In this document: one piece after another, positions 8,101 through 57,524 of the stretch
Position numbering within the stretch: position 1 is the first letter of the stretch
Layout: each line of letters begins with the position of its first letter
Virus record (IMG/VR): IMGVR_UViG_3300022745_000017
Coordinates: 1 to 64,000 of that record
Direction: 5' to 3' (one strand)
Length of the DNA stretch: 64,000 bases
Made by a program: the position numbers and the translations under genes
Notes under the pieces: generated by a model
The model's input: the letters and a program-made list of their open reading frames with translations, nothing else
Told to the model about the DNA's origin: nothing
Databases searched by the model: none

Positions 8101-10614
8101 ACCAGCACTCATCATGATCCCGGTGCCATTGGAGTCTTGTGCAGTGAATTGGTCACTCTGCCCAATAGCATCTACAGGCGGTGCCCACCAGCCCGCGTTG
8201 GCGACGTTCTTGATACGCTCAGGCATGACAGCCATGGCATCGTCATTGCTGGAGCGTCCACGCATGAAAGTCGTAAGATCACTCTTAGGCAGTGACAAGT
8301 CACGCCAGCTCGCAGTCACAGAGGCACCTGACGACTTACCCCTTTTGCGCTTAGCCTTGCCTGTCGAGCTCGTCGACTGTCCATCTGTGTTCGTTCCATC
8401 TGTCGTTGGTGGTGGCGCGGGTGGCTCTGGAGGCTGAGTCGGTTTGAAGAGCCCTCGCAAATCGTCAAAGCCCTCAGCATGCAGCCTGACGAAGATAGGC
8501 TTTAAGACACTAGCGGCTTGGAAGTCTTGAATGAACTGATCGGAGTTAAAACCAGTTTTAGGGATTTCAGCGCGCTCCCTCCAAGCTTTCAAGGGGTCCA
8601 CCCGGTTGGAGAGCACTTGTGCATTGTTAGTGCTCGTCATAGGCCTTTGCGACTCATCGTAGAATCCACGCAAGTAGTCGCTCAGTGCAAAGCTAGACGT
8701 ATCGCTGTTCTTGTCTTGCCTAATGAGGCCAATGCGCTGGAGGCGGTCAGTTTGTCCGGCATGCACTTGTGACTGGATACGCTCACGCGGATCACCGACA
8801 TTGTTGCGCAGGGAGTTGTGCAACTTGTCAAACTCTAACTTCTTAGAGGGCTCCAGTCCGGGGGCATAAAACTGATCGAGCAGCTCAGTGATCGCTTGCT
8901 TATCTGACGATGAGGCTGTGCTGACGGCTTCAGTCTTCAGGAAGTTATCCCTGGTAGCGGATGTACCAGCCACAGAGTTTTGGAACAATGCTGCGCGCAA
9001 AGCTTTATTTTGCTCAGGCGTTAGTTTCTTGTCCTTGTCGAGCTTGTCCATCAGCCGGTCTAGATCGGAGTGCGTACTGTACTGACCGATGCGATCAGTG
9101 AAACGCTCTTTGAACTTATCGTCAATGCTGCTCTGGGTATCAAACACACCTTTATCGTGATCAAACTCAGTGAGCTCAATGTCTTTCATACCCGTCAGCA
9201 GCATTTGCTGAACTTGCAATTGCCTAGATAGCAATCCGGGGATGATCTCATTGATTGTTCGATCTGTGCGACGCGTGTAGATGAAAGCGTTGTCGAGCTC
9301 TTTGCCGTTGATGATCTCCATGCCTGTGCTGACGGAGTTGTTAGGCAGCACACTTTGGATCGAGCGCACAATGGCAGGAATAAGGCCCGTCTTATAGTTG
9401 TACTCATCTGACCTGCGGAAGTCTTCGGCTTTACGGGTCTTATTCTCCATCATATCCAGCAACCAGTCATTGGCTTTACCAATGGTCTTATTGCCATCCA
9501 CGACGTTTTTCTTGACCCATGAGCCAGCCCTGTTCATCATCTTCTCACCGACAAACCCACCTGCGATGCTGCCTCCGAGTTCTGTCGGATCAACCATGCC
9601 GCCTTCACCAGCGACCGATTGCAGCATGTCCGCACCACTCTCAGCGCCAGCCAAACCCATGCGGAAATCACTGGCCATGGAGCTGACTTTACCCGTGATC
9701 TTGTTGCGCACATTGGTAAAGAGGTCTTTGATGTATTTGGAGTTATCACCAAACAAACCAGATTGCACGGAGCCAAAGAACTTATTGCGACCAAGCTCCA
9801 TGAAGGCTTCAGACTTCTGAATCTTCTTGAACTCAGGCAGTCCTGTGTTCTTGATAACGTCTTGAAAGCCTTTGTCTGCGAGCTCTCGGTGGGCTTTGCT
9901 CTCTGTCAAGATGTCTTGCAGTGCGAACAGGGATCGAAACTGGAGCTCCAGTGATTTCTTCTGGAATGCCAAGGTGATCGTTGTCTCGTACTTAGACAAC
10001 CGTGAGACATCTTTAGAGATGTTGTTAATCACACCAAACGACGTTGCAAACCGAAACTGGTCTGTGCCTTCTTTCAAGGCGTCTTTGGCTTTATCCTCGA
10101 CTCGGTTTTTGGTGTCTTGCTCTACAGAGAACTTAAACGCTTCTGCCATTTGCCCAGTGAGGAAATCCTCACGTTGGCGCTCAGCAGAGAGATCTGGCCG
10201 AATGGAGTCTACTTCGTCTTGCTTCCACTCTTTGAGCTTATCGCGTACACTCTGTGGTATAAACGAGGCGTCTTGAGGGATCAGCTTAGTGACCAGGCGT
10301 TTAGTGTCTTTGATGACAGGTTTGACTGTCTTGGCGACTTCGTCGTAGGTCTTACTGACATTTTGTGTCACGTCGCTGGCAAAGTCTGCCGTTTGACCAA
10401 ACCCGGCTGGCAACACCCCGCGTGTTACACGAGAGATGGTATGGATGTCTTGTGCGCTATCCTTCAAGCCATCGAGAAACCCGGTGCTAAACTTGGTGAT
10501 CGGCTTGCGGTCATCTTTGCCATCAGGTGCGTCAAAGTCAAAGCCAGCAAAGTCTAAATCGGCATCGATGTCAAACCCACTGTCTACCTTTTCGTCGATC
10601 TTCTTGGAAGCCAT
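2107..10614 (-). CDS. giant tail/tape-measure-like virion protein (phiKZ gp181-like) with C-terminal M15 (VanY-like) zinc peptidase domain
   Basis: 2835 aa, GGAG RBS at about 10621-10624, divergent from the vRNAP beta' gene. Contains two DVYVxGxxxPxLxA repeats, a long Gly-rich hydrophobic segment, and the M15 motifs TSGYRS, SMHEFGLAMD and EPWH. Confidence 0.85.
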   Translation of the reverse strand: MASKKIDEKVDSGFDIDADLDFAGFDFDAPDGKDDRKPITKFSTGFLDGLKDSAQDIHTISRVTRGVLPAGFGQTADFASDVTQNVSKTYDEVAKTVKPVIKDTKRLVTKLIPQDASFIPQSVRDKLKEWKQDEVDSIRPDLSAERQREDFLTGQMAEAFKFSVEQDTKNRVEDKAKDALKEGTDQFRFATSFGVINNISKDVSRLSKYETTITLAFQKKSLELQFRSLFALQDILTESKAHRELADKGFQDVIKNTGLPEFKKIQKSEAFMELGRNKFFGSVQSGLFGDNSKYIKDLFTNVRNKITGKVSSMASDFRMGLAGAESGADMLQSVAGEGGMVDPTELGGSIAGGFVGEKMMNRAGSWVKKNVVDGNKTIGKANDWLLDMMENKTRKAEDFRRSDEYNYKTGLIPAIVRSIQSVLPNNSVSTGMEIINGKELDNAFIYTRRTDRTINEIIPGLLSRQLQVQQMLLTGMKDIELTEFDHDKGVFDTQSSIDDKFKERFTDRIGQYSTHSDLDRLMDKLDKDKKLTPEQNKALRAALFQNSVAGTSATRDNFLKTEAVSTASSSDKQAITELLDQFYAPGLEPSKKLEFDKLHNSLRNNVGDPRERIQSQVHAGQTDRLQRIGLIRQDKNSDTSSFALSDYLRGFYDESQRPMTSTNNAQVLSNRVDPLKAWRERAEIPKTGFNSDQFIQDFQAASVLKPIFVRLHAEGFDDLRGLFKPTQPPEPPAPPPTTDGTNTDGQSTSSTGKAKRKRGKSSGASVTASWRDLSLPKSDLTTFMRGRSSNDDAMAVMPERIKNVANAGWWAPPVDAIGQSDQFTAQDSNGTGIMMSAGKGSGGFSFTKGSASNPQPAQGLTERAFSMVRSAIHDGAVKLGIRDAIKTAQPKDIQKASLDAFSPKIAQLARSTQAGNDSSFTESITTPEFGGGGGGGKPPRGPLSEMLEQIKEGVLSIAWNVTDMFEVMKSGLVMKVTRSNTDFLGAVPLLKKLKTLQIKDLDPSKVKELYQKIKATRPAALVADSVQQMREELLVMQKVGVKAFAKEKLEGAKGFGKAKTKQALDYFEKNHPELLDKAKAAGDKITEITGDAKELAAKKQKEMLDYLEKNHPELFGKAKQHLDKAADLAKSAKKKGGEVLEKGKEQWETTRAYLLEHYPDIVDFVDPTKGSFKERKEIVTALMSAAKTKTKDLVDSKLAKTNAGLPADQQFDASLPGVASFIAYKVAQLIGSGAHGGAKLFSWGGMKSFKLVRGIGNVLKNIATDDTFDVYVEGDNKPRLTATGIKAGLYHFMDNGEKLVNSMNINRPVADPAGQCVISAEELTKLYVMDIKTRVVRAYRSGVSLVKPGLNMMKDAMVKWYPKIWKAETGLVATAFKTLTSAAGVVKQGLVEALDRPIDVYVVGSPTPALYAKIMEIGGYVSAKDHDKKITRPGEIDGAVMDVTGDKPVVALTIDDLKKGIVDAHGKPIKALSGKLKDIISAVVGKGVDIAKWSWGVTRSVAGKLSKGIKGLFGELSIEINNKRSADTLGKIYEFLMVRFRPKKNKLGDPDGDGIVANSWQDYQAKKKADEEKKAKDPKAPGIAGKGKDSKDGKGGETTGLLAGISGMLSNVTGALSTFSSIFSTGLKLGGGFGKGLGMVGRGVMATAGFGLKALGMTGGLGLNLLGGALRLGVGVLGGGLGMVGSAIAGTASAVMTIGGGLLSLLASPVVLSIGAAALAGYGAYKAYQYLTRDSMTKLQRMRYVQYGFPIEDDKHAHKVFALEDVVKKNVRLNEGEAYINERGIDVKSMLEPFGLDPTDEQQQATFYGWYQKRFKPIFLSHVVACDAMTKSNDLTKADEFKGEEFKKFVTATRFDNGPYDYNKLPIIPAIAATDGKYVKAFIDNLLIDKKDNSKSKQKAIGKTAAAMAAISKDAGQDNIYSIDQPKANLVVDPKSLKASEKIPGVKAAAAAAAVVPTLALATPVVKKTFTNAPPKQVEQEELTEQDVAAGQASHLSPANARTEPITKFNRHRQAGVSTQVQKPLSMSLAPVAEKPDDASQEAVGPEAEVDPMEAYRKASPMVKAAPAAKVAPTKAKPKETPGAIVSQAIAQNAGADKPKEVAKAKVTKETGDAQDASRQQVQAIDAVRWRSYGLTKLDFDKVLALSKLERMILADVSYSGYSGAAWEGDPAAVLNKVCGDFRVSLINKDAVSNWTVWFVKRFLPVITTFASAYKRETKRVDVLEGIKTLKARQLYQIAKTTSGDSSCWNVAISPWPGYSLNTDSSSVKANLDLLESMMKSDNLSEQTGKSSSNDVKKATKADLQGGDDVTKSKSVMDKIGDFFGFGQSKITGLKPGMPGSPSGTTPAATPLSEGDPKKSASIGASPTAPKDQGAAKTNAPMPSAPSSIKTAPGALLDGENGYNALQVMPGVDINSVNPAFLKKLYGMAEEYNKITGKKFIVTSGYRSIAKQAELYEKYGPKRAAKPGSSMHEFGLAMDLNRDELNEAEKLGLMRKYGFTRPIGGEPWHMEHAATQGEARESFKRNQGLARDVIEKGAGIGGGGLGTIPNAPLGSINAAYSDKLMKANSTPVASDAPDIGGAAPSPAPAAGAPATANPAKSAPLGKPTKASTAASPAATPTTSGIDTATPVATAPADGAPTIQQTKPEETSGGQRPARFKVDKQKTDVAKEPGQSYVDRFGTTGKLQARDSYAPAAKPAPADKSATTGKPEVSNAEQPPMSRSQAIEKANAIATQGPMSTPYGFQPSQMLKEQKVIPNQGLSEKALSTANDTLTAQLGVQQKILEALTRLEKFITTKKETPTQAATPIDSKTPAADVKTIKPRNVPVPMRSSFTT

Positions 10615-42279: not shown

Positions 42280-44220
42280 ATGTCGACTCCCACTGGGATC
42301 AAAATCGGTGGCGCTTCCCCTTTGGTGCGCCCTGTAACCACCGCCCCTGCCGCTGCACCCGCAGCTCCTTCCTCCCCCGCCTACAGTAAGCGAGAAGATG
42401 CAATGGAAAAAGACAAAGACTTCGATCAGCGCGCCAACTGGCGCGCTAAAGCCATCAGCACCCCCAGCCAATCTGCGCAAGCCGGTGACCTGCTGGAGCT
42501 GACCCGCAAGGTCATGAGCGATTACAACATCCCTGGCTGCAAGCTCTCGGCCGAGCTGGTCTCTGGCACGACCTACGGCCTGCTGTTCTCGACGGTGGTG
42601 GTGCGCCTCTCTGCTGGCTCCAGCCATGCGGTGTACATGCTGGCTGCTGAAGGCAGCTTCGCCGATGGTCGCTACCCCGACGCTGTCGTCAAAGTGGCCA
42701 ACTCCGGCGAAGTAAGTGTGGCCCGTGGCCCGATGGACGCACTGGGCGGCAAGTATGCCAAGACTTTGACCGACCATGTCTTGGCTGGCCTGCCCCACGG
42801 TGACACCCTCATCTACGTGGGCAACACCTACGTCCCGCGTGAGTGGGATTGTGGCGCGGACACGAGCGTCAACGTGCGCACCAAGGTGGTTGGCCTGATC
42901 GTCAACGCCATCGCAGCGGTGGCCGCTGAGTTCACCGAGCAACGCGGCGAGCAGCCCATCAATTTGGCAACATGGTTGCAACCAGGTGAAATCCTGGAAG
43001 CCGCTGTTTCGTTCGGCAACGAACCTCGCCCCAATGCCCTCGGCGTGCCCACTCGCACCGATGTCATCATCGACCTGCGCACTGCGGTGACTGGTCGCAC
43101 AGCTGTGCGTGAACGCGACCGCGACGGGTTCGACTTCATGGACTTGAACACCACCAAGGGCGGCGGCACACTGGCGTCGATCGGTGGTTGGCTCCAAGCC
43201 GAATGGATGCCTGAAACGGGCGAGGTCGTGCGTGACTCCGAAGGCCGGATCTTGCCGCGCCCCTTGGCGGCTCGCTTGATCTTGAGCAACCTCGTCAGCA
43301 CCGAAGCCAAGTGCTTGTCCCTCACCACGTTGGCGGTGGCAACGGCAGCGGTAATGCGTCAAAGCAGCATCTGGTGGCATGGCTTCAAGCCGCGCTACAA
43401 TGCCACGCAAGCGGTGAAGGACGCCACGAACGTGGGCGCGCTGGATGTGCTGGTGAACCTGGCCGAACGGATGACGCCGCGTACCGCCATGGGTGACATC
43501 CCCTATGGCGAAGTGCAACGCCTGGGCAGCGACGCTGAGTGGGATTTCTTCATGAACGCCAGCTTTCAGCAACGTCTGGCCATCGGCTTGCTGGTGCCTG
43601 CGGCTGATCCCGAAAGCTGGGCCCTCGATCCTTTCCTGCGCTCAGCGCTGGGCGATCCCGACAGCGATGCCTTGATCGCAGGGTTGCTGAACTGGTTGAC
43701 CAACAACAAGTTCGCCGACTACTACGACGGTGGCTCGATCTGCCTACCCTACTCCGAGCAGGTGCAAACGGGCACCTACACCGGCAGTGATGGCATGCCA
43801 CGCCCCATCGAGGACGTTGACTTGACCGCCGTTTGCGCCCGCTTTGGCAAGCAGCAGCCTGACGGCATCGTGGCCTGGATGAACGCCGTCAACGACGCCA
43901 ACACGTCGTTTGCCCGCTCGGCAGCCAGCCGCGCGACGATCCGTGACACGGTGCTGGGTGTGCCCAGCAAGGTGCGTGGCACTGCCACCATCGTGATGCT
44001 GCGTGGCCATGTTCTGGACGCCGCACAACGTGCCATGGACGCCGCCAAGGTCAGCCCGCGTGTCATCGCTCCTGGCCTGGCTGCCATCGATCAGCGCCGT
44101 CAAGGTGCTCGCTGGGGTGATGCCTTGCTGGACAGCCGCACCTACGGGCGTGGTCGTGGTGGTGACGACGGTGGTGGCAGCACGCTGAGCCTGCGCAGTC
44201 GCGCCTTCCGCAACGCTTAA
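42280..44220 (+). CDS. chmA: chimallin, major phage nuclear shell protein (phiKZ gp54-like)
   Basis: 646 aa between the DNA pol/gp52-like genes and nvRNAP beta'N; disordered Pro/Ala N-terminus, GVPTRTD, GTYTGSDGMPRPIEDVD, RRQG...Gly/Arg C-tail; strong C/G codon bias; GAGGA RBS. Confidence 0.85.
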   Translation: MSTPTGIKIGGASPLVRPVTTAPAAAPAAPSSPAYSKREDAMEKDKDFDQRANWRAKAISTPSQSAQAGDLLELTRKVMSDYNIPGCKLSAELVSGTTYGLLFSTVVVRLSAGSSHAVYMLAAEGSFADGRYPDAVVKVANSGEVSVARGPMDALGGKYAKTLTDHVLAGLPHGDTLIYVGNTYVPREWDCGADTSVNVRTKVVGLIVNAIAAVAAEFTEQRGEQPINLATWLQPGEILEAAVSFGNEPRPNALGVPTRTDVIIDLRTAVTGRTAVRERDRDGFDFMDLNTTKGGGTLASIGGWLQAEWMPETGEVVRDSEGRILPRPLAARLILSNLVSTEAKCLSLTTLAVATAAVMRQSSIWWHGFKPRYNATQAVKDATNVGALDVLVNLAERMTPRTAMGDIPYGEVQRLGSDAEWDFFMNASFQQRLAIGLLVPAADPESWALDPFLRSALGDPDSDALIAGLLNWLTNNKFADYYDGGSICLPYSEQVQTGTYTGSDGMPRPIEDVDLTAVCARFGKQQPDGIVAWMNAVNDANTSFARSAASRATIRDTVLGVPSKVRGTATIVMLRGHVLDAAQRAMDAAKVSPRVIAPGLAAIDQRRQGARWGDALLDSRTYGRGRGGDDGGGSTLSLRSRAFRNA

Positions 44221-46925: not shown

Positions 46926-47513
46926 ATGAGCACCCCACCCAACTTCATTCAAGCCAATCAGATCCAACAACTGCGTCGCAATAGCGACAATATTCGGGAC
47001 TTCCTGGGCGATATTCCTGTGCCCAAGGGACGTATCTCTGAGCTTGCATTCGTTGAATATTTCTTGCCTTTGTTCACCGGCAAGATACCACCCCAGGAGC
47101 ACGATGAACGCTTAGGGCGCTGGTATCGCATCAGTGGTGGGCCCTACAAGGCAGTCGATATCGTAAAGCCTGATGGGAGTGTTTTAGAGTTCCCGATGTT
47201 TTTCGATCTCAGCACCATCTCAGTGCGCCGGGTTGAGCGGCGAGATTCCTTCAGCTTGGAGTCTTTGTCCCATCAAGCGAGTTTGGCTGTCGGTAAACCC
47301 CCTGCGCAAGCGGCTCAAGCTGTTACTGACCTAGTGGATGCAACCCTCGCAGCCATCGGTACGACAGAACAAATAGAGGTGCCAGAGAACGTCAAGAAGA
47401 TCCATGCGATCTTGAAGAGCTACGACCCGAGCTTTACGCCCAACACAGGTACTGTAAGCACGCAAGTAGCTCCACCTCCCGTACAGGCTTCTTTTACCGA
47501 TGATGAATACTGA
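46926..47513 (+). CDS. conserved hypothetical protein (195 aa)
   Basis: ISELAFVEYFLPLF...WYRISGGPY; overlaps the nuclease start. Confidence 0.65.
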   Translation: MSTPPNFIQANQIQQLRRNSDNIRDFLGDIPVPKGRISELAFVEYFLPLFTGKIPPQEHDERLGRWYRISGGPYKAVDIVKPDGSVLEFPMFFDLSTISVRRVERRDSFSLESLSHQASLAVGKPPAQAAQAVTDLVDATLAAIGTTEQIEVPENVKKIHAILKSYDPSFTPNTGTVSTQVAPPPVQASFTDDEY

Positions 47514-48666
47514 GCTCACACCAGTAGCCCAGGCAGCGCGTATTGTGGTGGTGAGTGACTTACACTTAGGTCACCGCAATACGCCTACGCGTCACATCGT
47601 TGAAAACCTCAACCGGCATGTGACGTGCCCTAAGGTGTTTTCCAAACTCGACATCTTCTTTGTCGCAGGTGACTTGTTTGATGATTTGCTCTTACTCACA
47701 CAAGACGAGATCGCTGAGATACAGGCTTGGTTGTTTAGGACATTGGCGCTGTGCTTAAAGTACCGTGTTAAGTTTCGCCTACTCAAGGGCACACCTAGCC
47801 ATGACCGAGATCAATCTGATTGGGTAGACTCAATCGCCAAGTTGTGCAATGAGCACTTTAACTGCAAGATCGATTTTAAGTATTTCAACGACATCTCTCT
47901 AGAGTACTTTCCTGAGTTTGATCTGAAGGTGCTCTATGTCCCCGATGAGATTAGGCCAACGGGCGTAGAGACTCTCAGAGATGCAAAGCAGTTAGCGCTA
48001 TCAGAGGGTTGGGATGGTGTTGATTTGGCAATCATGCATGGGTTCTTCAAGTCTCAGCTACCGGCTTGTGCGGTGAGTCCTCAAGCCCTCGATGAAAACG
48101 ATTGGCAAGACTTTGTCAAAGGGCAGCTCTTTATTGGGCATGTGCATACACACACCGTGTGTGGACGTATCTTTGCACAAGGATCTTTCGATAGACTCTC
48201 TCACGGTCAGGAAGAAGACAAAGGGTTTGCATTGGCTAACTTGGGGCCAGGTAGTGCGATCAACAGTGTAGAGTTTGTGACAAATCCACAAGCTCAGACT
48301 TATAAGACATTGACCTGTAATCACTCAGAGGTTGACCGAGCCATTACTTACATCGATAAGATGTTAGCTAATGAGACAGGTAGGATCTTTGTGAAGATCA
48401 AAGCACAGGAAGATAAGCCGATCTTACTGGCTAAGCGTCTGCTCAAGCAGCGCTACCCTCTTGTGCACTGGGACTTTGAGAAGATTAAGTCCGGTGAAAA
48501 GCAAACGAGAGAGCACGCCAGCAAGTCTAGACTAACCCAGTCACTTATCATTAACCGCAGCACAGTTCGTGCACAGCTCCTTGATCGTTTAAAAGTCAAT
48601 GGAGTCAGCAAAGAAGTCATTCACCATTGTTCTGTCCTCATCGATGAAACACTAGGACGCATATGA
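47500..48666 (+). CDS. Mre11/SbcD-like metallophosphoesterase nuclease (phiKZ gp65-like)
   Basis: SDLHLGH, AGDLFD, GTPSHD, MHG, GHVH, GSFDRL motifs. Confidence 0.88.
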   Translation: MMNTELTPVAQAARIVVVSDLHLGHRNTPTRHIVENLNRHVTCPKVFSKLDIFFVAGDLFDDLLLLTQDEIAEIQAWLFRTLALCLKYRVKFRLLKGTPSHDRDQSDWVDSIAKLCNEHFNCKIDFKYFNDISLEYFPEFDLKVLYVPDEIRPTGVETLRDAKQLALSEGWDGVDLAIMHGFFKSQLPACAVSPQALDENDWQDFVKGQLFIGHVHTHTVCGRIFAQGSFDRLSHGQEEDKGFALANLGPGSAINSVEFVTNPQAQTYKTLTCNHSEVDRAITYIDKMLANETGRIFVKIKAQEDKPILLAKRLLKQRYPLVHWDFEKIKSGEKQTREHASKSRLTQSLIINRSTVRAQLLDRLKVNGVSKEVIHHCSVLIDETLGRI

Positions 48667-49523
48667 GTCTATCTATCTTAGCTTCTAGAGCCACTTCGGC
48701 TTTTCCCATCTCGATTGGTACGAGCTTAGCACTGGAGTCTTGCTATAAAGGCACACAACCACCGTTTGATCCTAACCGAGTCATCCCGCAAGTCATCGAT
48801 GTCTCCAAGTACGGCTCTGTCTGGATCAACCTACTGACAGTTGTGAGAAACATCTACAGTAGTGTGCCTTCGGCTGATGCGAAAGCTTTGCACGTCAGAG
48901 ACATCGTTGATGTGATGGCAAATGAGTGTGACTTGATCAAAGAGATCTTCACCAAGAATACGCCAGGCATCAAAGTCGTTTTCTATCAATGCGATTACGA
49001 CGGGATCAAAAGCAACTATCCTCGGGCCATCCCAAAAGAGAGTCAGACCACCAACCAAGTGATGTTTGACAAACTGTGCGTATCGGTACTAAAGACATAT
49101 CTGAGGACAATCGCCGAAGACGATGTCAAGACTTTCGCTTTGTTTCTCAGTCCCGATCTGTTTGAGAAGGCAATCATCATCACTCATATGACGCACGATC
49201 TGCTCAGTCATGAAAAGTTCCACACACTAGACCTACTGGAGTCTCACACCGGGGCGCTTAAGTCCAAAGCGCGCTGGTATACGAAGTTTGCAAAGTCTGT
49301 TGTCAGCGACGGGATTGAGCGTATTGCGTTTAACCGAGTGACTTGGCAATTCTTCGGGGATGGACAGCTAGTGAGTCCTTATCCTAACAAGGCTAGAAAG
49401 ATGCTTCTAGACTTTGCCAAAGAAAAAGATTGGACAGCTCTAACCACTCTGGAGCGCATGCGCTACACACTGTCTGATTTCCCCGACCGCTTCCTAGGAG
49501 AGACGCTCAAACTCATGTTTTAA
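48663..49523 (+). CDS. conserved chimallivirus protein (phiKZ gp66-like)
   Basis: ATGA coupling; FPISIGTSLALE, LLESHTG, WYTK, FGD. Confidence 0.65.
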   Translation: MSLSILASRATSAFPISIGTSLALESCYKGTQPPFDPNRVIPQVIDVSKYGSVWINLLTVVRNIYSSVPSADAKALHVRDIVDVMANECDLIKEIFTKNTPGIKVVFYQCDYDGIKSNYPRAIPKESQTTNQVMFDKLCVSVLKTYLRTIAEDDVKTFALFLSPDLFEKAIIITHMTHDLLSHEKFHTLDLLESHTGALKSKARWYTKFAKSVVSDGIERIAFNRVTWQFFGDGQLVSPYPNKARKMLLDFAKEKDWTALTTLERMRYTLSDFPDRFLGETLKLMF

Positions 49524-49597
49524 ACTCAACACACGCTACATCTATTGAGTCAGAGGTGATGCCACTTACCTTTGACTTTTATTTTTAGGAAAACATC

Positions 49598-50290
49598 ATG
49601 GCATATGAGAAAACCAGCAGCATTTTGAATGGCCGCCCGCAAACTTTCAGCTCCAAATCAGCCGATGGTCATTGGGCTACCATTCGCTTCCTCGTCAATC
49701 GCAACATGGTGCAGCTCGAAGCAGCCACCAACAACCCTGCTGATCGCAACAAGCAGCGCAACTTCGGCAAGATCACTTGCAACATCAGCTTCGTCGACTT
49801 CATGTTTATCTTGGATCAGTTCGACAAGATGATCAAGTCGGAAAAAGAAGCTTCAGTGGCCATGCAGCTGAGCGACACGGTCTGGAAAGATGGTCAGCGC
49901 ACCAAAGATCCTGAACCCGTGTGCCGCCTGACGATTGGCAAGAACGAAAAGCTCATCGTCTACATCGAAGTCGAAGACCTGACCAATGTCGGCCTGGGCA
50001 CGCTGCGGTACTACCCTGGCACACCCGATCGCCGCACGTTTGCCGTACTGTCTCCCACAGGGGAAGTGGTGCCGCCAGCCAAGGTGATCAACGCCTACGC
50101 TCGCTCTTGGTACACAGCTTGGTCGACTCTGGTTCCTGCGGTGATGGTCCAAGAGTGGCAACCTCCTTCGCCTCCGGGCTCCAATGGCGGTGGCGGTGGC
50201 GGTGGTGGAAACTCAGGTGGGGCTCCCAAGCGTGCGCCGGCCAATGTATCCGATGGTGACCTCGGACTCGATGACGACATTCCGTTCTAA
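49598..50290 (+). CDS. single-stranded nucleic-acid-binding protein, ChmC/Imp6 (phiKZ gp67)-like
   Basis: AGGA RBS; immediately upstream of the sigma-like subunit; Gly/Pro linker and acidic DDDIPF C-terminus. Confidence 0.7.
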   Translation: MAYEKTSSILNGRPQTFSSKSADGHWATIRFLVNRNMVQLEAATNNPADRNKQRNFGKITCNISFVDFMFILDQFDKMIKSEKEASVAMQLSDTVWKDGQRTKDPEPVCRLTIGKNEKLIVYIEVEDLTNVGLGTLRYYPGTPDRRTFAVLSPTGEVVPPAKVINAYARSWYTAWSTLVPAVMVQEWQPPSPPGSNGGGGGGGGNSGGAPKRAPANVSDGDLGLDDDIPF

Positions 50291-50312: not shown

Positions 50313-50341
50313 ACAGCGGCTACGGCCGCTGTTTGTTATTT
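50313..50341 (+). terminator. intrinsic terminator with cUACGg tetraloop
   Basis: acagcggc-tacg-gccgctgt followed by ttgttattt. Confidence 0.7.
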
Positions 50342-50428
50342 ACACAACAGTACAATATAGTGTCTAACTAACTCTCTACCAAAATGACAAAATTCAACCC
50401 ATCCAAATACGTGTATACGGATAAATCG

Positions 50429-50470
50429 TTACAAACACATTGAACCATAACAGGTTCAATGTGTTTGTAA
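50429..50470. repeat. 18-bp perfect inverted repeat
   Basis: ttacaaacacattgaacc-ataaca-ggttcaatgtgtttgtaa. Confidence 0.85.
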
Positions 50471-50490
50471 GAGTGTATTTTACTCAAAGC

Positions 50491-50536: not shown

Positions 50537-52135
50537 ATGCAAATCAATCTACCGAAAGATCCTATTGCCAGCAAAGGCATGACCGCGCACCTGATGCATA
50601 AGGGGTTGGTATTGGAGTGGGATGTTTCCCAGTTTCCATTCCGTGCATTCAAGGCTGATGTGCTCTCCAGACATATCAACGCCTATTGGGCGAGCTTACC
50701 CAGCGCAAGGCAAGATCAGATCTTTGAGGTTTACAGAACCATTCGCAAGATCTTCGACCGAGCCAGCGACGTTTTTAGTGTCCAAGAGTTCAGTGTCAAT
50801 GCGCTGATTTGTGAACTCAAGGACCCCTGCTGTCAGTTGATCAACTTGCACCCATTTGACGACATCTGGAAATGGGCAAGTGTGCGCCAAGACATTGTCG
50901 TGCCTGCGAGCATGAAAAATAGCTTCAATCCTGATAGTGATTGGATGCAGACAGCTGCCAAGACTTATACTGCGATGGACTACACGCAGTTGACAGCGAT
51001 GGTCGTTATGCTTCGGTCACTGATTCCGGTGTGGGGTGAGTTTTTGTTTCGAACCAACAGCGAGATCAGCAACTCCTGGAAAAGCTACTACGCTTTGCAG
51101 TTGGTGGACTCAGCCGAGATCATGACGTGTATTCCGATGGAGAAGTTGACGCAATACGTTTTGCACAACATGCCCAAGGACAAGACCAATGCGGCTGCAA
51201 CACTGGAAGGCGCTAGCACTGAGGAGTATCCGACGATGCTGCTAGCGACACTGCTCATCGGTAAAGTCGCCGTAGGTGACATTAGCAAGGTCGTCGATGA
51301 GACTAACCTCGTGACCATCATCTTCAATGCGCTGGGTACAAAAAGCGGTGTGAACAATGGTGCGTTGTTTCGTAACAACGACATTCGCATGAAGGACTTC
51401 CCAGAAGACGGCGACGGTGCGCTGGCTGTTTCACGTATTGAGTCGATGCGTGCTCAGATGGAGATCCCTTCGAGTGCCATTGTCACGGCCAATTATTACG
51501 CAAGCAAGCCATTCGATGTCCTGGAAAAGATTGACAAGAGTTGTCCACCCCAACTACTTGAGACGTTTAGCCAGAACAATCTACGGCTTATCGGGGCATC
51601 ACACCGCATCAAAGATGTGCAAGTCTTGTTGACGAGCTATGTCGTGCACAAAGCCATGTCAGCGAGGTATTTGCCCTACATTGACAAGAGCAATGTCATC
51701 AATTGCATCAGTGTAGCTCAAGCCGTTTTGTGGCATTGGGGATTCAAACAACTGGCTGGCTTGCTTAGCGCTAGTGTCCCTAATGATGCAGGCATGATGG
51801 CTGCCACCGGGACGTGCTTTAACATCCCTAGCGAGCTGATGGCCAAGCTCCAAGACATCTATCCTTACGGGCAACCTGCGCCTACCCGTAAGAAATACGA
51901 AGCAAACGAAGATGCTTCCCAACGTGCCACAAGGAGAGTCCCACCCGTCTCAAGAGACATCGCTCACATCACCGAGCAGCTCACTCAATACGAGTGGCTG
52001 ATCAACCTCCCCAAAAACATGCTGGAAGAAGTCACAGGTCGCGCTGAACAGCGCAGACTACCTTGCCCCAGCGATATCCGCGTACAGCTAGCCCAACTAG
52101 CTATTCGCATCCACTCAGCCTCTATGGAGAAATAA
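50537..52135 (+). CDS. non-virion RNAP promoter-specificity (sigma-like) subunit (phiKZ gp68-like)
   Basis: 532 aa; INAYWASLPSARQDQIFEVY, KTYTAMDYTQL, LIPVWGEF, AQAVLWHWGF; synteny. Confidence 0.72.
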   Translation: MQINLPKDPIASKGMTAHLMHKGLVLEWDVSQFPFRAFKADVLSRHINAYWASLPSARQDQIFEVYRTIRKIFDRASDVFSVQEFSVNALICELKDPCCQLINLHPFDDIWKWASVRQDIVVPASMKNSFNPDSDWMQTAAKTYTAMDYTQLTAMVVMLRSLIPVWGEFLFRTNSEISNSWKSYYALQLVDSAEIMTCIPMEKLTQYVLHNMPKDKTNAAATLEGASTEEYPTMLLATLLIGKVAVGDISKVVDETNLVTIIFNALGTKSGVNNGALFRNNDIRMKDFPEDGDGALAVSRIESMRAQMEIPSSAIVTANYYASKPFDVLEKIDKSCPPQLLETFSQNNLRLIGASHRIKDVQVLLTSYVVHKAMSARYLPYIDKSNVINCISVAQAVLWHWGFKQLAGLLSASVPNDAGMMAATGTCFNIPSELMAKLQDIYPYGQPAPTRKKYEANEDASQRATRRVPPVSRDIAHITEQLTQYEWLINLPKNMLEEVTGRAEQRRLPCPSDIRVQLAQLAIRIHSASMEK

Positions 52136-53614
52136 ATGTCCTATGGTATTCGCAGCGTTACTGCTGTCTCAATCAGTTTTCAGGAAATCGGCGGATACGA
52201 TCCGGTTTACTTGCGCCCATGGGAGATGGCCTACAGCGAACGCGAGAAAGGTGCGTTTGTCGATGCCCTGGGCGGCGCGAGCCAGGTCACCGTCGGTGCA
52301 ATGGCTCGCGTCGCACACCACCTTATCAAGCCTTCGGTGCGCCCCTATGGTGCGGCTGAGATTGCCAACGGCTGGGAAACCCAGCGCTTTCGCTTTTGCG
52401 GTACGTTCGAAATGGAACGGCTGGATGGGGACATCTTCTACTGTGAAGTCCAGGGCTATACTGACTACCTTGGGATCACAGACATGGGAGACCAGATCGA
52501 TCCCAAGATGGTTTTGCACATCAATAGCCTGACCAACCTCTATAAGTCGGTGCGGCGAACTCCCACCGGCTCACAAGCACATGCTCGTGTGCTCAACTCG
52601 TGTCAGGCAGTCAACACAGTTGGTGAAGAAGACACCTATGCGTTGCGACCCGAGGACATCGCACGAAAAGTGCAGTTGCTGGAAATTGGAGATTCGCCCG
52701 ACGAGCGCAGCAATGGGCAAATCTCCATGGCGATGGACTTGACATCGAAGATCACCGCTGAGGGCGCTCTGAGCAACCGCTCAAACCAAGTGGCTTCCAG
52801 CATGCTGGTCAGGACACTCAATCCGTTCTTTGCTCAAACGCTCAACCCCGAGGGCCCGAGTGAGACGTATAACCTGATCGAGGAAGCGCTGCCCGAGATG
52901 CGCTCCACGAGCGTGACATCTGACCAATTCATCAGCTACATCAATGGAGATGATCGATTCAATTACAACAGGCGCTGTAATGAGATCACATGGGGTGATT
53001 TGTGCTACAAGATCCCCAACGCATTACGCGTGACGACCGTCTTGCACTTGGACTCGCGCCAGCGCATGGGTTTGGATCGCCCTGGCATGTACCAGGGCTG
53101 GAACAACACCCTGCCAGAAACCATTTTTGCAGATCAAGTCCTCAAAAGCTTGCCGGCATTGATGGGTGAGTACTACCTGAACACGGTGGCATTCACAGTG
53201 TCTAACTATGACACTGGCAACGGCCAAGCTTACTTTGCTTGGTCACAAGCGCCGACCTTGTCGGTGCCGGGTCTCGATGAGTTGCGCTTGGCTACGGGGT
53301 TCGAAAACCGCATCCTGATGGAGCTCTATGCCATCAGCCGGTCTAATCTGATCGGCTATCACCTGGAAGTGTTCTGTAGCGCCGACGGCATGTTCCGCTG
53401 CAAGTTGGGCATCGAAGGCGCATCGCCCTTGACCTACGCTGCGCCAGTGCTGGCAGACTCCCTGTTCCCGCCGGTCTTGACGACCAATCCGAATCACCTG
53501 CAAAACCTGGCCGCAGGTTTCAATGACTTGTACACGGTCGTGCAGGACTATGTGGCCAGCCACAACACCCGAGCACCTGTGCGTGAAGCAGCGCGCTTGC
53601 TTGGAAATCTGTAA
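52136..53614 (+). CDS. nuclear protein-import factor PicA/Imp1 (phiKZ gp69)-like
   Basis: 492 aa; IANGWETQRFRF, GYTDYLG, LRPEDI, ADSLFPPV; directly after the gp68-like gene. Confidence 0.7.
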   Translation: MSYGIRSVTAVSISFQEIGGYDPVYLRPWEMAYSEREKGAFVDALGGASQVTVGAMARVAHHLIKPSVRPYGAAEIANGWETQRFRFCGTFEMERLDGDIFYCEVQGYTDYLGITDMGDQIDPKMVLHINSLTNLYKSVRRTPTGSQAHARVLNSCQAVNTVGEEDTYALRPEDIARKVQLLEIGDSPDERSNGQISMAMDLTSKITAEGALSNRSNQVASSMLVRTLNPFFAQTLNPEGPSETYNLIEEALPEMRSTSVTSDQFISYINGDDRFNYNRRCNEITWGDLCYKIPNALRVTTVLHLDSRQRMGLDRPGMYQGWNNTLPETIFADQVLKSLPALMGEYYLNTVAFTVSNYDTGNGQAYFAWSQAPTLSVPGLDELRLATGFENRILMELYAISRSNLIGYHLEVFCSADGMFRCKLGIEGASPLTYAAPVLADSLFPPVLTTNPNHLQNLAAGFNDLYTVVQDYVASHNTRAPVREAARLLGNL

Positions 53615-55288: not shown

Positions 55289-55388
55289 AAGTTTGCTTTC
55301 TCAAGAGGGTTATAAATACCAAAGCAGCGTCAGTCATATATCATCAACATGGGCCTCGCTGATGGCTCTATCTTTTACGGAAAAACAC

Positions 55389-57524
55389 ATGTTAGATCCC
55401 AAGTACGCTAAACTTTTTCCACAACCCAAGCCAGCTACTCCTTATGACCTGAGCTTGATTTACCCCAATCAGCTCAACAATGCTTGGATGGGCGTGTGTG
55501 GCCTACAGCCTTTTGTAGGTAATGTGTCCTCATCACGGCTCCAAATGGAGTCCCAGCACATTGGGCAGTGTTTACCCATTGAAGGCGCTGATGAGCGCAT
55601 GATTCAGACCACACTAGATAAAGAGTATGCAAAGTATTCTTTCAGTGTGAGCATGCCGGAGAATGGTCGCATCTTGAAGATTTTCAAGAAGTACCCTTCT
55701 TCTGGGCTTGCGGCGGACTCCATCCAGCACAACCCGCTGACAACGGTGATTTACGAGTCTGAAGAAGGTGAGATTGGATACTTTAACTTAACGGACTACC
55801 GCAGCGAGCATCAGTATTTTGGATTTCGCTACGAAGCTGGCGCTGAGTTGTCCAATCTGGCCCCTGACCGCGACTTCAAGAAAGGTGATGTGTTCTTGAA
55901 GTCCCCACTCGTGTCTAAGCGCGGTGGTTGGAAGTTCGGTGTGACAGCCAACATGGCTCTGTTTAGCCACCCAGGCACAGCTGAAGACTCGGTGTTGGTG
56001 CGTGCTGGGTTTTTGAAGAAGATGCGATTCAAGATGTTTCGCCAACGCGTCTTCGAATATGGCAAGACAGCGTTTCCGAAGAACTTGTACGGCAAGAATG
56101 GGCGCTTTAAGTTCATGCCTGACATCGGTGAGAAGGTCGCTGAGCATGGCTATTTGTGTGCACTAGGGCAGCATGACGAAGGACACTTGTCGTTCGTTGA
56201 GCAAAGCACGCAAGCCATGGCAACGATCGATGAGTTTGATGAAACTGTGTTCGTTGGCCCAGGTGGTACAGTGGTGGATGTGCAAGTCTTCCACGACATG
56301 AAGGACGACAAGAACATTCAACCGGAAATGGATGAGCAGGCGCTGAAGTACTACCTGGCTGGTAAGCGCTACTATCAGAGTATTTACGATTATTACAAGC
56401 GCTTGCGTGCAGCACGCGGAGATGGCTTGCGCATGACGGATGCGTTCCATCACCTGATCGTAGAAGCGATGTCGGTCATCACTCCGACAAAGGCCAGGCT
56501 GATTCACCGTCGCACTCCGATCGATCGGTTTCGCATCGTCGTCACTGTCGAGTATGACATCGAGCCCAACATCGGTTTTAAGATGGCTGGTCTCAGCGGC
56601 GATAAGTCGATCATGTGTAAGATCGTGGCCGATGAAGACATGCCTGTCGACGAACACGGCAATGTGGCTGACTTCATCTCATCTGAAGACTCTACCGTGG
56701 GTCGTAACAACTCGTCACGTATCTACGAGCAGTTTGTTGGATCGGTTCAGGTACAACTTCACCGCGAGATATGTCAAGCGCTAGGGATAACTCCCAAGAC
56801 AGTGTTTGCACGAGCTGTCAAGCACCTGCAACAAGTCGATCAGTCGATCATTGATGAGGTTTGGGCGACACTCATTCGCTTTTACACGATTACCCGACAA
56901 GAAACAGCGCAAGCGGCTCTGAATACACCGAATGTGCGCAACTTCTTGGCGACCATCGTAGCCTACGGAGTCAACCTGATCTGGCCTACTGATAACGAGG
57001 TCGATAACCCGTTGATGGCGCTGGAGTTGGAGCGTGAGTTCAGGCCACTGCATGCCCCCATCTCTTACCGAGTGGAAGGCAGAGCTGTCAGAACCCTGCT
57101 GCCTATTCGCATTGGCCCGATGTATATCATCTTGCTTGAAAAGATCGGCGATGACTGGTCAGCGTGTTCTAGTACGAAGACACACTACCACGGCGTCCCT
57201 GCTCAAACGAGCATGGGTGACAAGTACCGCAACCCAGCGCGCGAAACACCTGTGCGTGCAACCGGTGAAGCCGAGGTCCGATTGCTTGTGAGCTACACAG
57301 GCCCTGAATCGGCGGCTGAGCAAATTGACAGAAACTCTAACCCCCAGACCCATGCGCTCATTACCAGAGGTTTGTTTGAAGCTGAAAAAGTCGGCAACAT
57401 CGGACAATTGGTAGATCGCAACAAGCACCCATATGGCGGAGCTAAGTCGCTTCAGATGGCTCACCACTACAACCTGTGCATGGGTTGGGAATTTGCCTAT
57501 AGAAAGGCCACTGTAACATGCTAA
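55389..57524 (+). CDS. non-virion RNA polymerase beta subunit, C-terminal part (phiKZ gp71-73-like)
   Basis: NVSSSRLQM, TAEDS, GFKMAGLSGDKS, LLEK, RATGEAE; likely start 55389 after the promoter-like motif at 55333. Confidence 0.9.
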   Translation: MLDPKYAKLFPQPKPATPYDLSLIYPNQLNNAWMGVCGLQPFVGNVSSSRLQMESQHIGQCLPIEGADERMIQTTLDKEYAKYSFSVSMPENGRILKIFKKYPSSGLAADSIQHNPLTTVIYESEEGEIGYFNLTDYRSEHQYFGFRYEAGAELSNLAPDRDFKKGDVFLKSPLVSKRGGWKFGVTANMALFSHPGTAEDSVLVRAGFLKKMRFKMFRQRVFEYGKTAFPKNLYGKNGRFKFMPDIGEKVAEHGYLCALGQHDEGHLSFVEQSTQAMATIDEFDETVFVGPGGTVVDVQVFHDMKDDKNIQPEMDEQALKYYLAGKRYYQSIYDYYKRLRAARGDGLRMTDAFHHLIVEAMSVITPTKARLIHRRTPIDRFRIVVTVEYDIEPNIGFKMAGLSGDKSIMCKIVADEDMPVDEHGNVADFISSEDSTVGRNNSSRIYEQFVGSVQVQLHREICQALGITPKTVFARAVKHLQQVDQSIIDEVWATLIRFYTITRQETAQAALNTPNVRNFLATIVAYGVNLIWPTDNEVDNPLMALELEREFRPLHAPISYRVEGRAVRTLLPIRIGPMYIILLEKIGDDWSACSSTKTHYHGVPAQTSMGDKYRNPARETPVRATGEAEVRLLVSYTGPESAAEQIDRNSNPQTHALITRGLFEAEKVGNIGQLVDRNKHPYGGAKSLQMAHHYNLCMGWEFAYRKATVTC

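What the first reader, a model, noticed from the sequence alone, without database searches (positions are those of the whole stretch)
50160..50290. ChmC/Imp6-like protein ends in the exact bacterial SSB interaction tip (DDDIPF)
Seen: the C-terminus is PPSPPGSNGGGGGGGGNSGGAPKRAPANVSDGDLGLDDDIPF-stop, a Gly/Pro linker plus DDDIPF. Established: proteobacterial SSB ends in DDDIPF and uses it to bind ExoI, RecQ, PriA, RecO, RNase HI, Pol III chi and others. ChmC is described as a Whirly-fold RNA-binding, nucleus-associated protein. Inference: this homolog mimics host SSB to recruit, import or sequester host genome-maintenance enzymes, or it is the phage's functional SSB.
Basis: partly seen in the sequence, partly recalled or inferred. 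Interest (0 to 1): 0.6.

Follow-up and report, generated by a model that had tools for sequence, protein, structure and literature searches.

The report
Phage ChmC carries an SSB-type tail
A nucleus-forming jumbo phage's essential RNA/DNA-binding protein ChmC ends in the same docking peptide (DDDIPF) that bacterial SSB uses to recruit repair and replication enzymes, and a tail of this kind turns out to be the common form in the deep branches of the ChmC family, which suggests ChmC works as the phage's own SSB-like recruiting hub.

Summary
ORF 49598-50290 (+) encodes 230 aa ending in a Gly/Pro/Asn linker and ...LGLDDDIPF-stop.

It is the ChmC/Imp6 (phiKZ gp67) orthologue of an uncultured 218-kb chimallivirus:
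- The profile match to phiKZ gp67 has probability 99.9%.
- The gene order is the same as phiKZ gp65-gp69, and ChmA lies 5 kb upstream.
- The predicted fold is Whirly (Z 8.8), not OB.

The tail is not peculiar to this phage. Outside one shallow Pseudomonas-type clade, 9 of 14 lineages sampled independently of the tail end in D-[IVL]-P-[FWLM]. All 96 members of the Pseudomonas-type clade, which includes phiKZ, PhiPA3 and 201phi2-1, have derived tips. That is probably why the SSB likeness is not in the ChmC literature I could search.

ChmC therefore copies the SSB design with a different core: a nucleic-acid-binding core that is a homotetramer in PhiPA3, a disordered linker and an acidic docking tip. 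No canonical SSB was found in this genome or in five model chimalliviruses.

Best reading: ChmC is an SSB-like hub whose tip docks partner enzymes. Whether those partners are host SSB-interacting proteins or phage proteins (Imp1/PicA, Rhc, polymerase) is unresolved. The one complex prediction I ran gave no answer.

The parts
49598..50290 (+). ChmC/Imp6 orthologue, 230 aa plus stop (protein P0001)
   Evidence: ORF and translation. phrog_3284, E 5e-27. hhalign of the 12-sequence profile against phiKZ gp67: probability 99.9, E 3e-33, full length.
49598..50167 (+). Whirly/PUR-type nucleic-acid-binding core, residues 1-190
   Evidence: AF2 model m4630ef2af604 is confident over residues 4-196, with two beta-sheet plus helix repeats. 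VIA-align: WHY1 Z 8.8, StWhy2 8.7, PBF-2 8.4, MRP1/2 8.2, PURA 7.0; unrelated rows score 5.3 or less. Of the six PhiPA3 residues needed for RNA/ssDNA binding, only K58 and R30 are kept, plus H25.
50168..50260 (+). Disordered Pro/Gly/Asn-rich linker, residues 191-221
   Evidence: pLDDT is below 50 from residue 197. Across the family the linker is 46% Gly and 17% Asn, about 48 residues long. The same region is described as N/G-rich in PhiPA3, phiKZ and Goslar ChmC (PMC11077065).
50261..50287 (+). Acidic C-terminal tip LGLDDDIPF, residues 222-230. The last six residues are identical to the proteobacterial SSB-Ct hexapeptide.
   Evidence: Sequence. The last 12 residues carry net charge -5. Family conservation. 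SSB-Ct = DDDIPF (PMC5872125; PMC7584906).
50313..50342 (+). Terminator-like hairpin (8-bp stem, 6 G-C pairs) plus T-run, 23 nt after the stop codon
49547..49588 (+). Terminator-like hairpin plus T-run between the gp66-like gene and ChmC. With the downstream hairpin it makes ChmC look like a transcription unit of its own.
47500..48666 (+). SbcD-like nuclease subunit (phiKZ gp65 position)
   Evidence: phrog_100, E 4e-35; phiKZ annotation
48663..49523 (+). gp66-like protein
   Evidence: phrog_3229, E 5e-68; position
50537..52135 (+). gp68-like protein (non-virion RNA polymerase subunit in phiKZ)
   Evidence: BLASTP against phiKZ gp68, E 8e-37, full length; phrog_3209
52136..53614 (+). Imp1/PicA orthologue (phiKZ gp69), the published direct binder of gp67/Imp6
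   Evidence: BLASTP against phiKZ gp69, E 3e-30 over about 490 residues; phrog_3141; Imp1-Imp6 binding in bioRxiv 10.1101/2024.03.27.586873
42280..44220 (+). Chimallin (ChmA) nuclear shell protein, which marks the genome as a nucleus-forming phage
   Evidence: phrog_4795 'nuclear shell protein', E 2e-27

Best explanation
The gene is the ChmC/Imp6 orthologue of a deeply divergent, uncultured chimallivirus. ChmC is built like a bacterial SSB with a different core: a Whirly-fold single-strand-binding domain (a homotetramer in PhiPA3), a Gly/Asn-rich disordered linker, and an acidic C-terminal tip ending Ile-Pro-Phe-COOH.

I propose that the tip works as an SSB-Ct does. (a) In the free protein it folds back on the basic nucleic-acid face and, together with the linker, drives condensate formation. 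(b) Once the core is loaded with single-stranded nucleic acid (nascent mRNA and/or ssDNA in or at the phage nucleus), the tip is freed as a short docking peptide. It then recruits enzymes that have a basic-rim, hydrophobic-pocket SSB-Ct site.

On this reading ChmC is the hub or stand-in for the SSB that these phages otherwise lack. In this phage the tip is letter for letter the proteobacterial consensus, so it should be chemically able to bind host SSB-interacting proteins as well as phage enzymes of the same families, for example the phage's RNase H-type Rhc.

Shown here: identity, fold, disorder, motif, its distribution in the family, and the absence of known SSB families. From published work on homologues: tetramer formation, RNA and ssDNA binding, tail-dependent condensates and shell localisation, Imp1 binding, and essentiality. 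Inferred: docking by the tip, its fold-back, and the identity of its partners.
For: Identity and context. Whirly fold rather than OB. Disordered tail.

Tip conservation: it exceeds core conservation in the deep lineages, and this is confirmed in tail-independent samples. The tree places every derived tip type inside one starred 96-row clade, and the DDIPF-like tips in the 38 deep rows outside it. An aromatic residue 2-4 positions before the D-[IVL]-P-F tip, as in E. coli FDDDIPF, occurs in 11 deep rows.

No PF00436 SSB in this genome or in phiKZ, PhiPA3, 201phi2-1, Goslar or RP31. No gp32, Enc34/gp2.5-like or DUF669 family in this genome.

Literature. PhiPA3 ChmC is a homotetramer that binds ssRNA (58 nM) and ssDNA (184 nM). 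Deleting its C-terminal 48 residues abolishes condensates and shell localisation but not RNA binding. It was found by proximity to nuclear UvsX (PMC11077065). E. coli SSB has the same core-IDL-CTP design. Its CTP binds at least 18 partners and also binds the OB fold, and IDL plus CTP drive condensates (PMC7584906). RNase HI is an SSB-Ct partner (PMC5872125). The phage RNase H-clamp protein Rhc co-purifies with ChmC in Goslar (PMC13648698), and this genome has an Rhc-like gene.

Tandem-core ChmC variants with a single tail parallel dimeric SSBs that carry two OB folds per chain. Other phage ssDNA-binding proteins of non-canonical build also carry (F)DDDIPF.
Against: There is no direct evidence that the tip binds anything. 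The only complex prediction (tail 186-230 against the Imp1 orthologue) gave no answer.

The published GFP-ChmC pull-down in PhiPA3 lists ChmB, RNA polymerase subunits and ribosomal proteins, and no classical SSB partners; however, PhiPA3 has a derived tip. PhiPA3 ChmC prefers RNA to ssDNA, and its knock-down phenotype is mRNA retention (PMC11077065).

Tips have diverged far from the SSB consensus in Goslar, Eowyn, a Vibrio phage and the whole Pseudomonas-type clade, so exact SSB likeness is not required for the essential function. The window protein keeps only 2-3 of the 6 basic residues shown to matter in PhiPA3.

The authors' own reading of the acidic segment, an 'electronegative cluster' that tunes solubility and RNA binding, needs no partner. 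The absence of four Pfam SSB families does not exclude an unrecognised SSB.
Confidence: 0.55

Rival explanations
1. Host-SSB mimicry in the strict sense. The tip exists to bind the host's SSB-interacting proteins (ExoI, RecQ, PriA, RecO, RNase HI, Pol III chi and others). The abundant early ChmC would either sequester them away from host SSB or bring chosen host enzymes to or into the phage nucleus.
For: The last six residues are identical to the conserved proteobacterial SSB-Ct. The D-[IVL]-P-F tip is held across lineages whose cores have drifted to 14-27% identity, as expected if the pocket belongs to proteins that do not co-evolve with the phage. SSB-Ct peptides alone suffice to bind partners (PMC5872125). 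ChmC is partly cytoplasmic and very abundant. Prophage DUF669 proteins and the phage protein Bas52_0087 carry the same tip, and their authors read it as host-directed.
Against: Chimalliviruses of E. coli, Klebsiella and Pseudomonas have non-mimicking tips, although their hosts are expected to keep the conserved SSB tip (PMC5872125; not checked here). Within the Pseudomonas-type clade each tip type is conserved in its own subclade, which points to a partner that changes with the phage. No host SSB partner was reported in the PhiPA3 ChmC pull-down. The host of this phage is unknown; the nearest cultured relatives infect Burkholderia and Ralstonia at 38-45% DNA polymerase identity. Even close relatives vary the acidic positions: DEDIPF in P0002 and DGDLPF in L019.
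Confidence: 0.3
2. The tip is a phage-internal address. It docks on a phage-encoded partner, most likely Imp1/PicA at the nuclear shell, or else the replisome (Rhc, DNA polymerase, helicase, UvsX). Its likeness to SSB-Ct reflects shared chemistry or ancient descent, with no role for host proteins.
For: phiKZ Imp1 binds gp67/Imp6 directly, and the two genes are adjacent there and here. PhiPA3 ChmC lacking its C-terminal 48 residues leaves the shell. Derived tips are clade-specific and conserved, as for a co-evolving pair. The tip diversified in the same Pseudomonas-type group in which the extra import factors Imp2, Imp4 and Imp5 are reported to be restricted. Rhc pull-down contains ChmC. T7 gp2.5 and T4 gp32 use acidic tails to bind their own replisome proteins (my knowledge, not checked here).
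Against: The predicted complex of tail and Imp1 orthologue gave no answer (this is not evidence either way). The phiKZ Imp1-Imp6 complex is stable in gel filtration at about 2:1, which suggests a larger interface than a 6-9-residue peptide. An AF2 screen of phiKZ Rhc against all phiKZ proteins did not rank ChmC among the top partners. A private phage pair would not need to stay on the bacterial consensus across such deep divergence.
Confidence: 0.3
3. The tip has no protein partner. It is only an intramolecular 'electronegative cluster' that shields the basic nucleic-acid-binding face and tunes solubility and condensation, as the ChmC authors suggested for the S/D/E-rich end.
For: PMC11077065: the C-terminal region is needed for condensates. 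The last 10 residues average 3.2 acidic and 0.06 basic residues across 134 homologues. The SSB CTP also binds its own OB fold.
Against: Charge alone does not explain the near-fixed order [IVL]-Pro-aromatic at the very C-terminus, with P at position -2 in 29/38 deep rows and F/W/M at -1 in 33/38, nor the terminal aromatic or hydrophobic residue kept in nearly all 134 homologues (F 85, W 20, M 13). That is the signature of a pocket-binding peptide.
Confidence: 0.12
4. Chance resemblance or low-complexity artefact.
For: The motif is only six residues long and sits next to a low-complexity region.
Against: It is the only such tail among 1079 ORFs in the genome, and it recurs at the exact C-terminus in dozens of homologues found independently of the tail.
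Confidence: 0.01

Closest known systems
ChmC / Imp6 (PhiPA3 gp61, phiKZ gp67, Goslar gp176, 201phi2-1 gp123)
   Same: Orthologous: profile match, gene order, Whirly fold, and an N/G-rich disordered C-terminal region with an acidic end (PMC11077065).
   Different: The tip here is the unmodified SSB hexapeptide DDDIPF. The studied phages have derived tips: DEDMPSF, DDEIPNF, ELASFDW and AFDGLAF. The core is very divergent, at 20-24% identity and on a long branch, and keeps only 2-3 of 6 mapped basic residues. The linker is shorter.
Bacterial SSB (Pfam PF00436), e.g. E. coli SSB
   Same: Three-part design of a single-strand-binding core (homotetramer in E. coli SSB and in PhiPA3 ChmC), a Gly-rich disordered linker and an acidic tip. 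The last six residues are identical. Both show tail-dependent condensates (PMC7584906; PMC11077065).
   Different: The core is Whirly, not OB. There is no sequence match to SSB chains beyond the tip. The studied homologue prefers RNA to ssDNA.
Plant organellar Whirly proteins (WHY1/2/3, PBF-2) and trypanosome MRP1/MRP2, PUR-alpha
   Same: Best structural matches, Z 7.0-8.8 over 122-140 aligned residues. The Whirly and MRP proteins form tetramers and all of these bind single-stranded nucleic acid; the plant proteins act in organelle genome maintenance (my knowledge).
   Different: No sequence-level family match (Pfam gave none). These proteins do not end in an SSB-Ct hexapeptide as far as I know (not checked here).
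Phage SSBs with acidic C-terminal tails (T7 gp2.5, T4 gp32)
   Same: An acidic tail, ending in an aromatic residue in gp2.5, recruits the phage's own polymerase and helicase and competes with DNA for the binding cleft (my knowledge, not checked here).
   Different: They have OB-type cores. Neither family is detectable in this genome.
Non-canonical phage or prophage ssDNA-binding proteins that carry (F)DDDIPF: prophage DUF669 proteins and Bas52_0087
   Same: A phage-borne protein outside the canonical bacterial SSB family ends in the host SSB tip, and the authors read this as mimicry of SSB to engage host factors such as SbcB/ExoI (PMC13687109; bioRxiv 10.64898/2026.04.29.721553).
   Different: Different folds (DUF669; two OB folds) and different phage groups. 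None is from a nucleus-forming phage, in which the replication compartment is walled off from most host proteins.

Membership tests
ChmC / Imp6 (chimallivirus gp67 family) | Sequence homology to phiKZ gp67 / PhiPA3 gp61 | tested here: met
   hhalign probability 99.9, E 3e-33, full length; phrog_3284, E 5e-27; tblastn links to the RSF1-group orthologues.
ChmC / Imp6 (chimallivirus gp67 family) | Position in the conserved block SbcD-like, gp66, gp67, gp68, Imp1(gp69), in a genome that encodes chimallin | tested here: met
   The same order is seen on a 224-kb relative contig.
ChmC / Imp6 (chimallivirus gp67 family) | Whirly/PUR-type fold | tested here: met
   AF2 pLDDT 76.7, pTM 0.71; WHY1 Z 8.8, MRP1 8.2, PURA 7.0, well above unrelated rows.
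ChmC / Imp6 (chimallivirus gp67 family) | Disordered C-terminal region: N/G-rich stretch followed by an acidic segment | tested here: met
   pLDDT below 50 for residues 197-230; composition.
ChmC / Imp6 (chimallivirus gp67 family) | Homotetramer | not tested
ChmC / Imp6 (chimallivirus gp67 family) | Binds ssRNA/ssDNA through the basic face (PhiPA3 K30, K48, K59, R35, R44, R63) | tested here: inconclusive
   Only K58 and R30 (plus H25) align with basic residues; A43, Q39 and N62 do not. Binding itself is not testable here.
ChmC / Imp6 (chimallivirus gp67 family) | Direct binding to Imp1/PicA | tested here: inconclusive
   Only the tail (186-230) was tried against the Imp1 orthologue: ipSAE 0.00, verdict 'no answer'.
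Bacterial SSB (PF00436) | OB-fold ssDNA-binding core | tested here: not met
   No Pfam hit; the fold is Whirly. It is therefore not a member of the SSB family, only an analogue in design.
Bacterial SSB (PF00436) | Intrinsically disordered Gly-rich linker | tested here: met
Bacterial SSB (PF00436) | Conserved acidic C-terminal peptide ending DDDIPF | tested here: met
   reference motif in PMC5872125.
Bacterial SSB (PF00436) | The tip binds SSB-interacting proteins | not testable with these tools
   Needs peptide-binding or pull-down experiments.
Whirly (Pfam PF08536) / PUR / MRP families | Sequence-level family membership | tested here: not met
   No Pfam family at E up to 1. The similarity is structural only.

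The most novel reading that the evidence does not exclude
ChmC is the missing replicative and repair SSB of nucleus-forming phages as well as their mRNA chaperone. Its SSB-Ct tip is the handle by which selected enzymes are gathered on single-stranded nucleic acid at or inside the phage nucleus. These would include host SSB partners in phages that keep the exact host consensus. Through the ChmC-Imp1 complex, the tip might even serve as a licence for bringing such enzymes through the shell.
Probability: 0.2. Interest if true: 0.85.

Novelty: new variant of a known kind. Interest (0 to 1): 0.62.

Why it matters
ChmC is essential in phiKZ, is one of the most abundant early proteins, and is currently read as an mRNA-export factor. 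Its C-terminal region is known to be required for condensates and shell localisation, but it has been described only by composition.

Recognising that this region is an SSB-type linker plus docking tip gives a concrete, cheap experimental handle: tip deletion, tip swap and peptide binding. That handle bears on three open questions:
- how ChmC is tethered at the shell and to Imp1/PicA;
- whether nucleus-forming phages tap or disarm the host's SSB-interaction network.

The survey also shows that the laboratory models (phiKZ, PhiPA3, 201phi2-1, Goslar) carry derived tips. Phages of Erwinia, Salmonella, Xanthomonas or Ralstonia with IPF/IPW/IPM tips would be better systems for these experiments.

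Tried and rejected
- **Complex prediction.** Complex prediction of the tail (residues 186-230) with the Imp1/PicA orthologue gave 'no answer', ipSAE 0.00. It is evidence neither way.
- **Solved structures by sequence.** The search of solved structures returned only low-complexity Gly-run matches and no SSB or Whirly chain.
- **Pfam.** No family.
- **Nucleotide similarity.** blastn of the 7-kb neighbourhood against cultured phages found nothing.
- **Related loci from the ChmC alignment.** The search for related loci failed because no stretch was conserved enough. It was replaced by an RNA-polymerase anchor.
- **tRNAs.** None in the window, so no host clue from that source.
- **Literature.** No paper in the held library links ChmC/Imp6 to SSB or to the IPF tip. 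The 'anywhere' search for ChmC plus SSB returned only irrelevant hits.
- **Rejected ideas.** An OB-fold SSB is contradicted by the fold. A chance motif is contradicted by the family survey. 'Every homologue has exactly DDIPF' was the impression from the first word search, and it is partly an ascertainment effect.
Full report
**1. The observation**

Window 49598-50290 (+) is a single open frame of 230 codons. In a mechanical list of 1079 ORFs of at least 50 aa from the whole 217,973-bp record, this is the only one with an acidic-[ILVM]-P-[FWLM] C-terminus. The record is an IMG/VR virus genome with direct terminal repeats and 49.9% G+C.

**2. What the gene is**

The window carries the chimallivirus core block:
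- DNA polymerase at 38711;
- the nuclear-shell protein ChmA at 42280 (phrog_4795);
- non-virion RNA polymerase subunits at 44309, 55293 and 57518;
- a helicase at 59659.

Around the ORF the order is SbcD-like (388 aa), gp66-like (286 aa), the ORF itself, gp68-like (532 aa) and gp69-like (492 aa). This matches phiKZ gp65-gp69 gene for gene. The last two are confirmed by BLASTP with E 8e-37 and 3e-30.

A 12-sequence profile of the ORF's homologues aligns to phiKZ gp67 over its full length with probability 99.9% and E 3e-33. phiKZ gp67 is the protein named ChmC (PMC11077065) and Imp6 (bioRxiv 10.1101/2024.03.27.586873; the review PMC13282480 writes 'ChmC/Imp6').

An AlphaFold2 model has mean pLDDT 76.7 and pTM 0.71. 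It is confident over residues 4-196 and disordered from residue 197. It matches plant Whirly proteins (WHY1 Z 8.8, StWhy2 8.7, PBF-2 8.4), trypanosome MRP1/2 (8.2) and PUR-alpha (7.0), while unrelated chains score 5.3 or less (Foldseek gives the same ranking).

The nearest cultured phages by DNA polymerase infect Burkholderia and Ralstonia, at only 38-45% identity. The host is unknown.

**3. The tail across the family**

The first word-index search returned 11 homologues at 20-58% identity, and all ended in (D/E)DIPF. That search counts shared 5-residue words, so the tail itself can pull in such proteins. I therefore treated the result as possibly biased and took two samples that do not depend on the tail.

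(a) tblastn with phiKZ gp67, where the alignments cover only the core, followed by reading the annotated ORF ends in 13 cultured phages:

| Phage | C-terminal tip |
|---|---|
| phiKZ | FDEDMPSF |
| PhiPA3 | FDDEIPNF |
| 201phi2-1 | ELASFDW |
| Noxifer | DFDDFVM |
| Goslar | AFDGLAF |
| Klebsiella Eowyn | DDDVWG |
| Xanthomonas LucasX | DDDIPM |
| Ralstonia RP31 | SDDIPW |
| Pseudomonas DT01 | DDDVPL |
| Ralstonia FLC4-4C | DFDDISF |
| Erwinia SNUABM_37 | DSDIPF |
| Salmonella SA002 | DESIPF |
| Vibrio Yong XC31 | SSTGW |

(b) IMG/VR loci anchored on two conserved peptides of the RNA polymerase beta subunit, which lies about 4-9 kb upstream. A core-only HMM found ChmC in 20 of 23 loci. Those outside the Pseudomonas-type group end DGDLPF, DDDITF, DDDIPM, DNDVPW and DSDIPF.

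A profile word search added 114 more proteins. In all, 134 non-redundant homologues were classified, and a tree was built on the core columns only:
- One starred clade of 96 rows has median core identity 57%. It holds phiKZ, PhiPA3, 201phi2-1, Noxifer and Psa21, and it contains every derived tip type: [ILVM]PxF, LPxF[DNG][FW], DFDDFVM and GFGDVMAF. None of its members ends in IPF.
- The 38 rows outside it have median core identity 27% (minimum 14%). Of these, 28 carry a DDIPF-like tip. At the last four positions D, I, P and F occur in 33, 26, 29 and 25 of 38 rows.
- In the tail-independent samples, 9 of 14 deep lineages end D-[IVL]-P-[FWLM] and 2 more end DDI[ST]F.
- Across all 134 homologues, the last ten residues average 3.2 acidic and 0.06 basic residues, and the final residue is F, W or M in 118.

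The tree is unrooted, so 'ancestral' is an inference. It rests on the DDIPF-like form occupying all the deep, long branches while the derived forms sit in one shallow clade.

**4. What this means**

ChmC has the SSB design. PMC7584906 describes bacterial SSB in three parts. The first is a conserved ssDNA-binding core that usually forms a homotetramer. The second is a disordered linker of variable length and composition. [quoted passage not shown] Linker and tip together drive phase separation.

PMC11077065 shows the following for PhiPA3 ChmC:
- it is a homotetramer;
- it binds ssRNA (58 nM) and ssDNA (184 nM);
- it forms condensates that require the C-terminal 48 residues;
- it loses nuclear-shell localisation when those residues are removed.

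That paper describes the tail only as 'N/G-rich' plus an 'S/D/E-rich electronegative cluster'. The words SSB, IPF and acidic do not occur in it. Neither the two recent reviews nor the import papers mention SSB, and no held paper combines SSB with Chimalliviridae. The likely reason is that the four model phages have derived tips.

Supporting details:
- In 11 deep rows an aromatic residue lies 2-4 positions before the D-[IVL]-P-F tip, as in E. coli ...FDDDIPF.
- Two metagenomic ChmC proteins of 475-481 aa have two Whirly cores in tandem with one linker and one AFD[SN]DIPF tip, at the same genomic position. This parallels dimeric SSBs with two OB folds per chain.
- No PF00436 SSB is detectable in this genome or in phiKZ, PhiPA3, 201phi2-1, Goslar and RP31.
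- No gp32, Enc34/gp2.5-like or DUF669 family is detectable in this genome.

**5. Mechanism and partners**

I commit to the reading that the tip is an SSB-Ct-type docking peptide on an SSB-like hub (confidence 0.55). Who it docks is open.

For host SSB-interacting proteins:
- the tip is identical to the host consensus;
- it is retained across very deep divergence;
- other phage proteins carrying the same tip have been read this way.

For phage partners:
- phiKZ Imp1 binds Imp6 directly, and the two genes are adjacent;
- the tail is needed for shell localisation;
- Rhc, whose N-terminal domain is an RNase HI-type domain, co-purifies with ChmC in Goslar; E. coli RNase HI is an SSB-Ct partner, and this genome has an Rhc-like gene at 204623-206218;
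- derived tips are conserved within subclades, although I expect their Pseudomonas hosts to share the conserved SSB tip, which I did not check.

The two are not exclusive. My one complex prediction, the tail against the Imp1 orthologue, returned 'no answer' and counts for nothing.

A purely intramolecular role as a charge cluster is less likely. Charge alone does not explain a fixed [IVL]-Pro-aromatic order at the very C-terminus.

Weak points:
- there are no binding data for any tip;
- the studied homologue prefers RNA, and its knock-down phenotype is mRNA retention;
- this window's protein keeps only 2-3 of the six basic residues mapped in PhiPA3.

**6. Novelty**

The protein is a new, very divergent member of a known family, and the motif is a known motif. 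The new point is their combination: a Whirly-fold, phage-nucleus protein with an SSB-type linker and tip, prevalent in the deep lineages of the family and probably ancestral. I found no report of this in the held literature. I rate it a new variant of a known kind, with interest 0.62.

**7. Limits**

- The host is unknown.
- The tree is a quick search with several long branches.
- The census outside the tail-independent samples may over-represent DDIPF tails.
- The large representative-protein search was deliberately not used.

Noticed in passing
L018:6001-7428 (protein P0018); also P0016: Two metagenomic ChmC proteins of 475-481 aa hold two complete Whirly cores in tandem (HMM domains about 12-193 and 191-411), followed by a single N/G linker and one AFD[SN]DIPF tip. 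They sit at the usual position after the gp66-like gene. This resembles dimeric bacterial SSBs with two OB folds per chain.
   Followed up: partly
window 49547-49588, 50313-50342 and 50429-50480: The ChmC gene is bracketed by terminator-like hairpins with T-runs. An 18-bp near-perfect hairpin also lies in the 246-nt gap before the gp68-like gene. Six terminator-like sites were found against 1.2 expected in shuffles. This suggests a separately regulated, highly expressed unit.
   Followed up: partly
Tree of 134 ChmC cores; loci L002-L004, L014: Within the shallow Pseudomonas-type clade the tip has split into discrete types, each conserved in its own subclade: IPxF, LPxF[DNG][FW], DFDDFVM and GFGDVMAF. 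This is the same phage group in which the accessory import factors Imp2, Imp4 and Imp5 are reported to be restricted. A link is possible but untested.
   Followed up: partly
window 55293-57524 (+): A single 743-aa ORF matches both phrog_18919 (residues 64-433) and phrog_23982 (residues 446-736), as well as the full-length phrog_3295. The RNA polymerase subunit that is split and interrupted in phiKZ (gp71-73) appears uninterrupted here.
   Followed up: no
G000:C1:204623-206218 (L015:1174-2769), outside the window: A 531-aa protein has an N-terminal RNase H domain (PF00075, E 1e-20) and a full-length match to phrog_3265 (E 2e-77). It is probably the Rhc (RNase H-clamp) DNA polymerase subunit. 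It is a candidate partner for an SSB-type tip, because E. coli RNase HI binds SSB-Ct.
   Followed up: partly
window 49598-50167 (residues 25, 30, 39, 43, 58, 62): Of the six basic residues whose mutation abolishes RNA/ssDNA binding in PhiPA3 ChmC, the window protein keeps only R30 and K58 (plus H25). These columns are K/R in 95-127 of 134 homologues, except the R63 column (43 of 134). The nucleic-acid face of this lineage may be rearranged.
   Followed up: partly
window 2107-10614 (-): A very long open frame of 2835 aa. It was not examined.
   Followed up: no
L020:15196-16110 and L021:15196-16110: The ChmC homologue in two IMG/VR contigs is unusually long (304 aa) and ends DDDITF, with Thr in place of Pro.
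   Followed up: no
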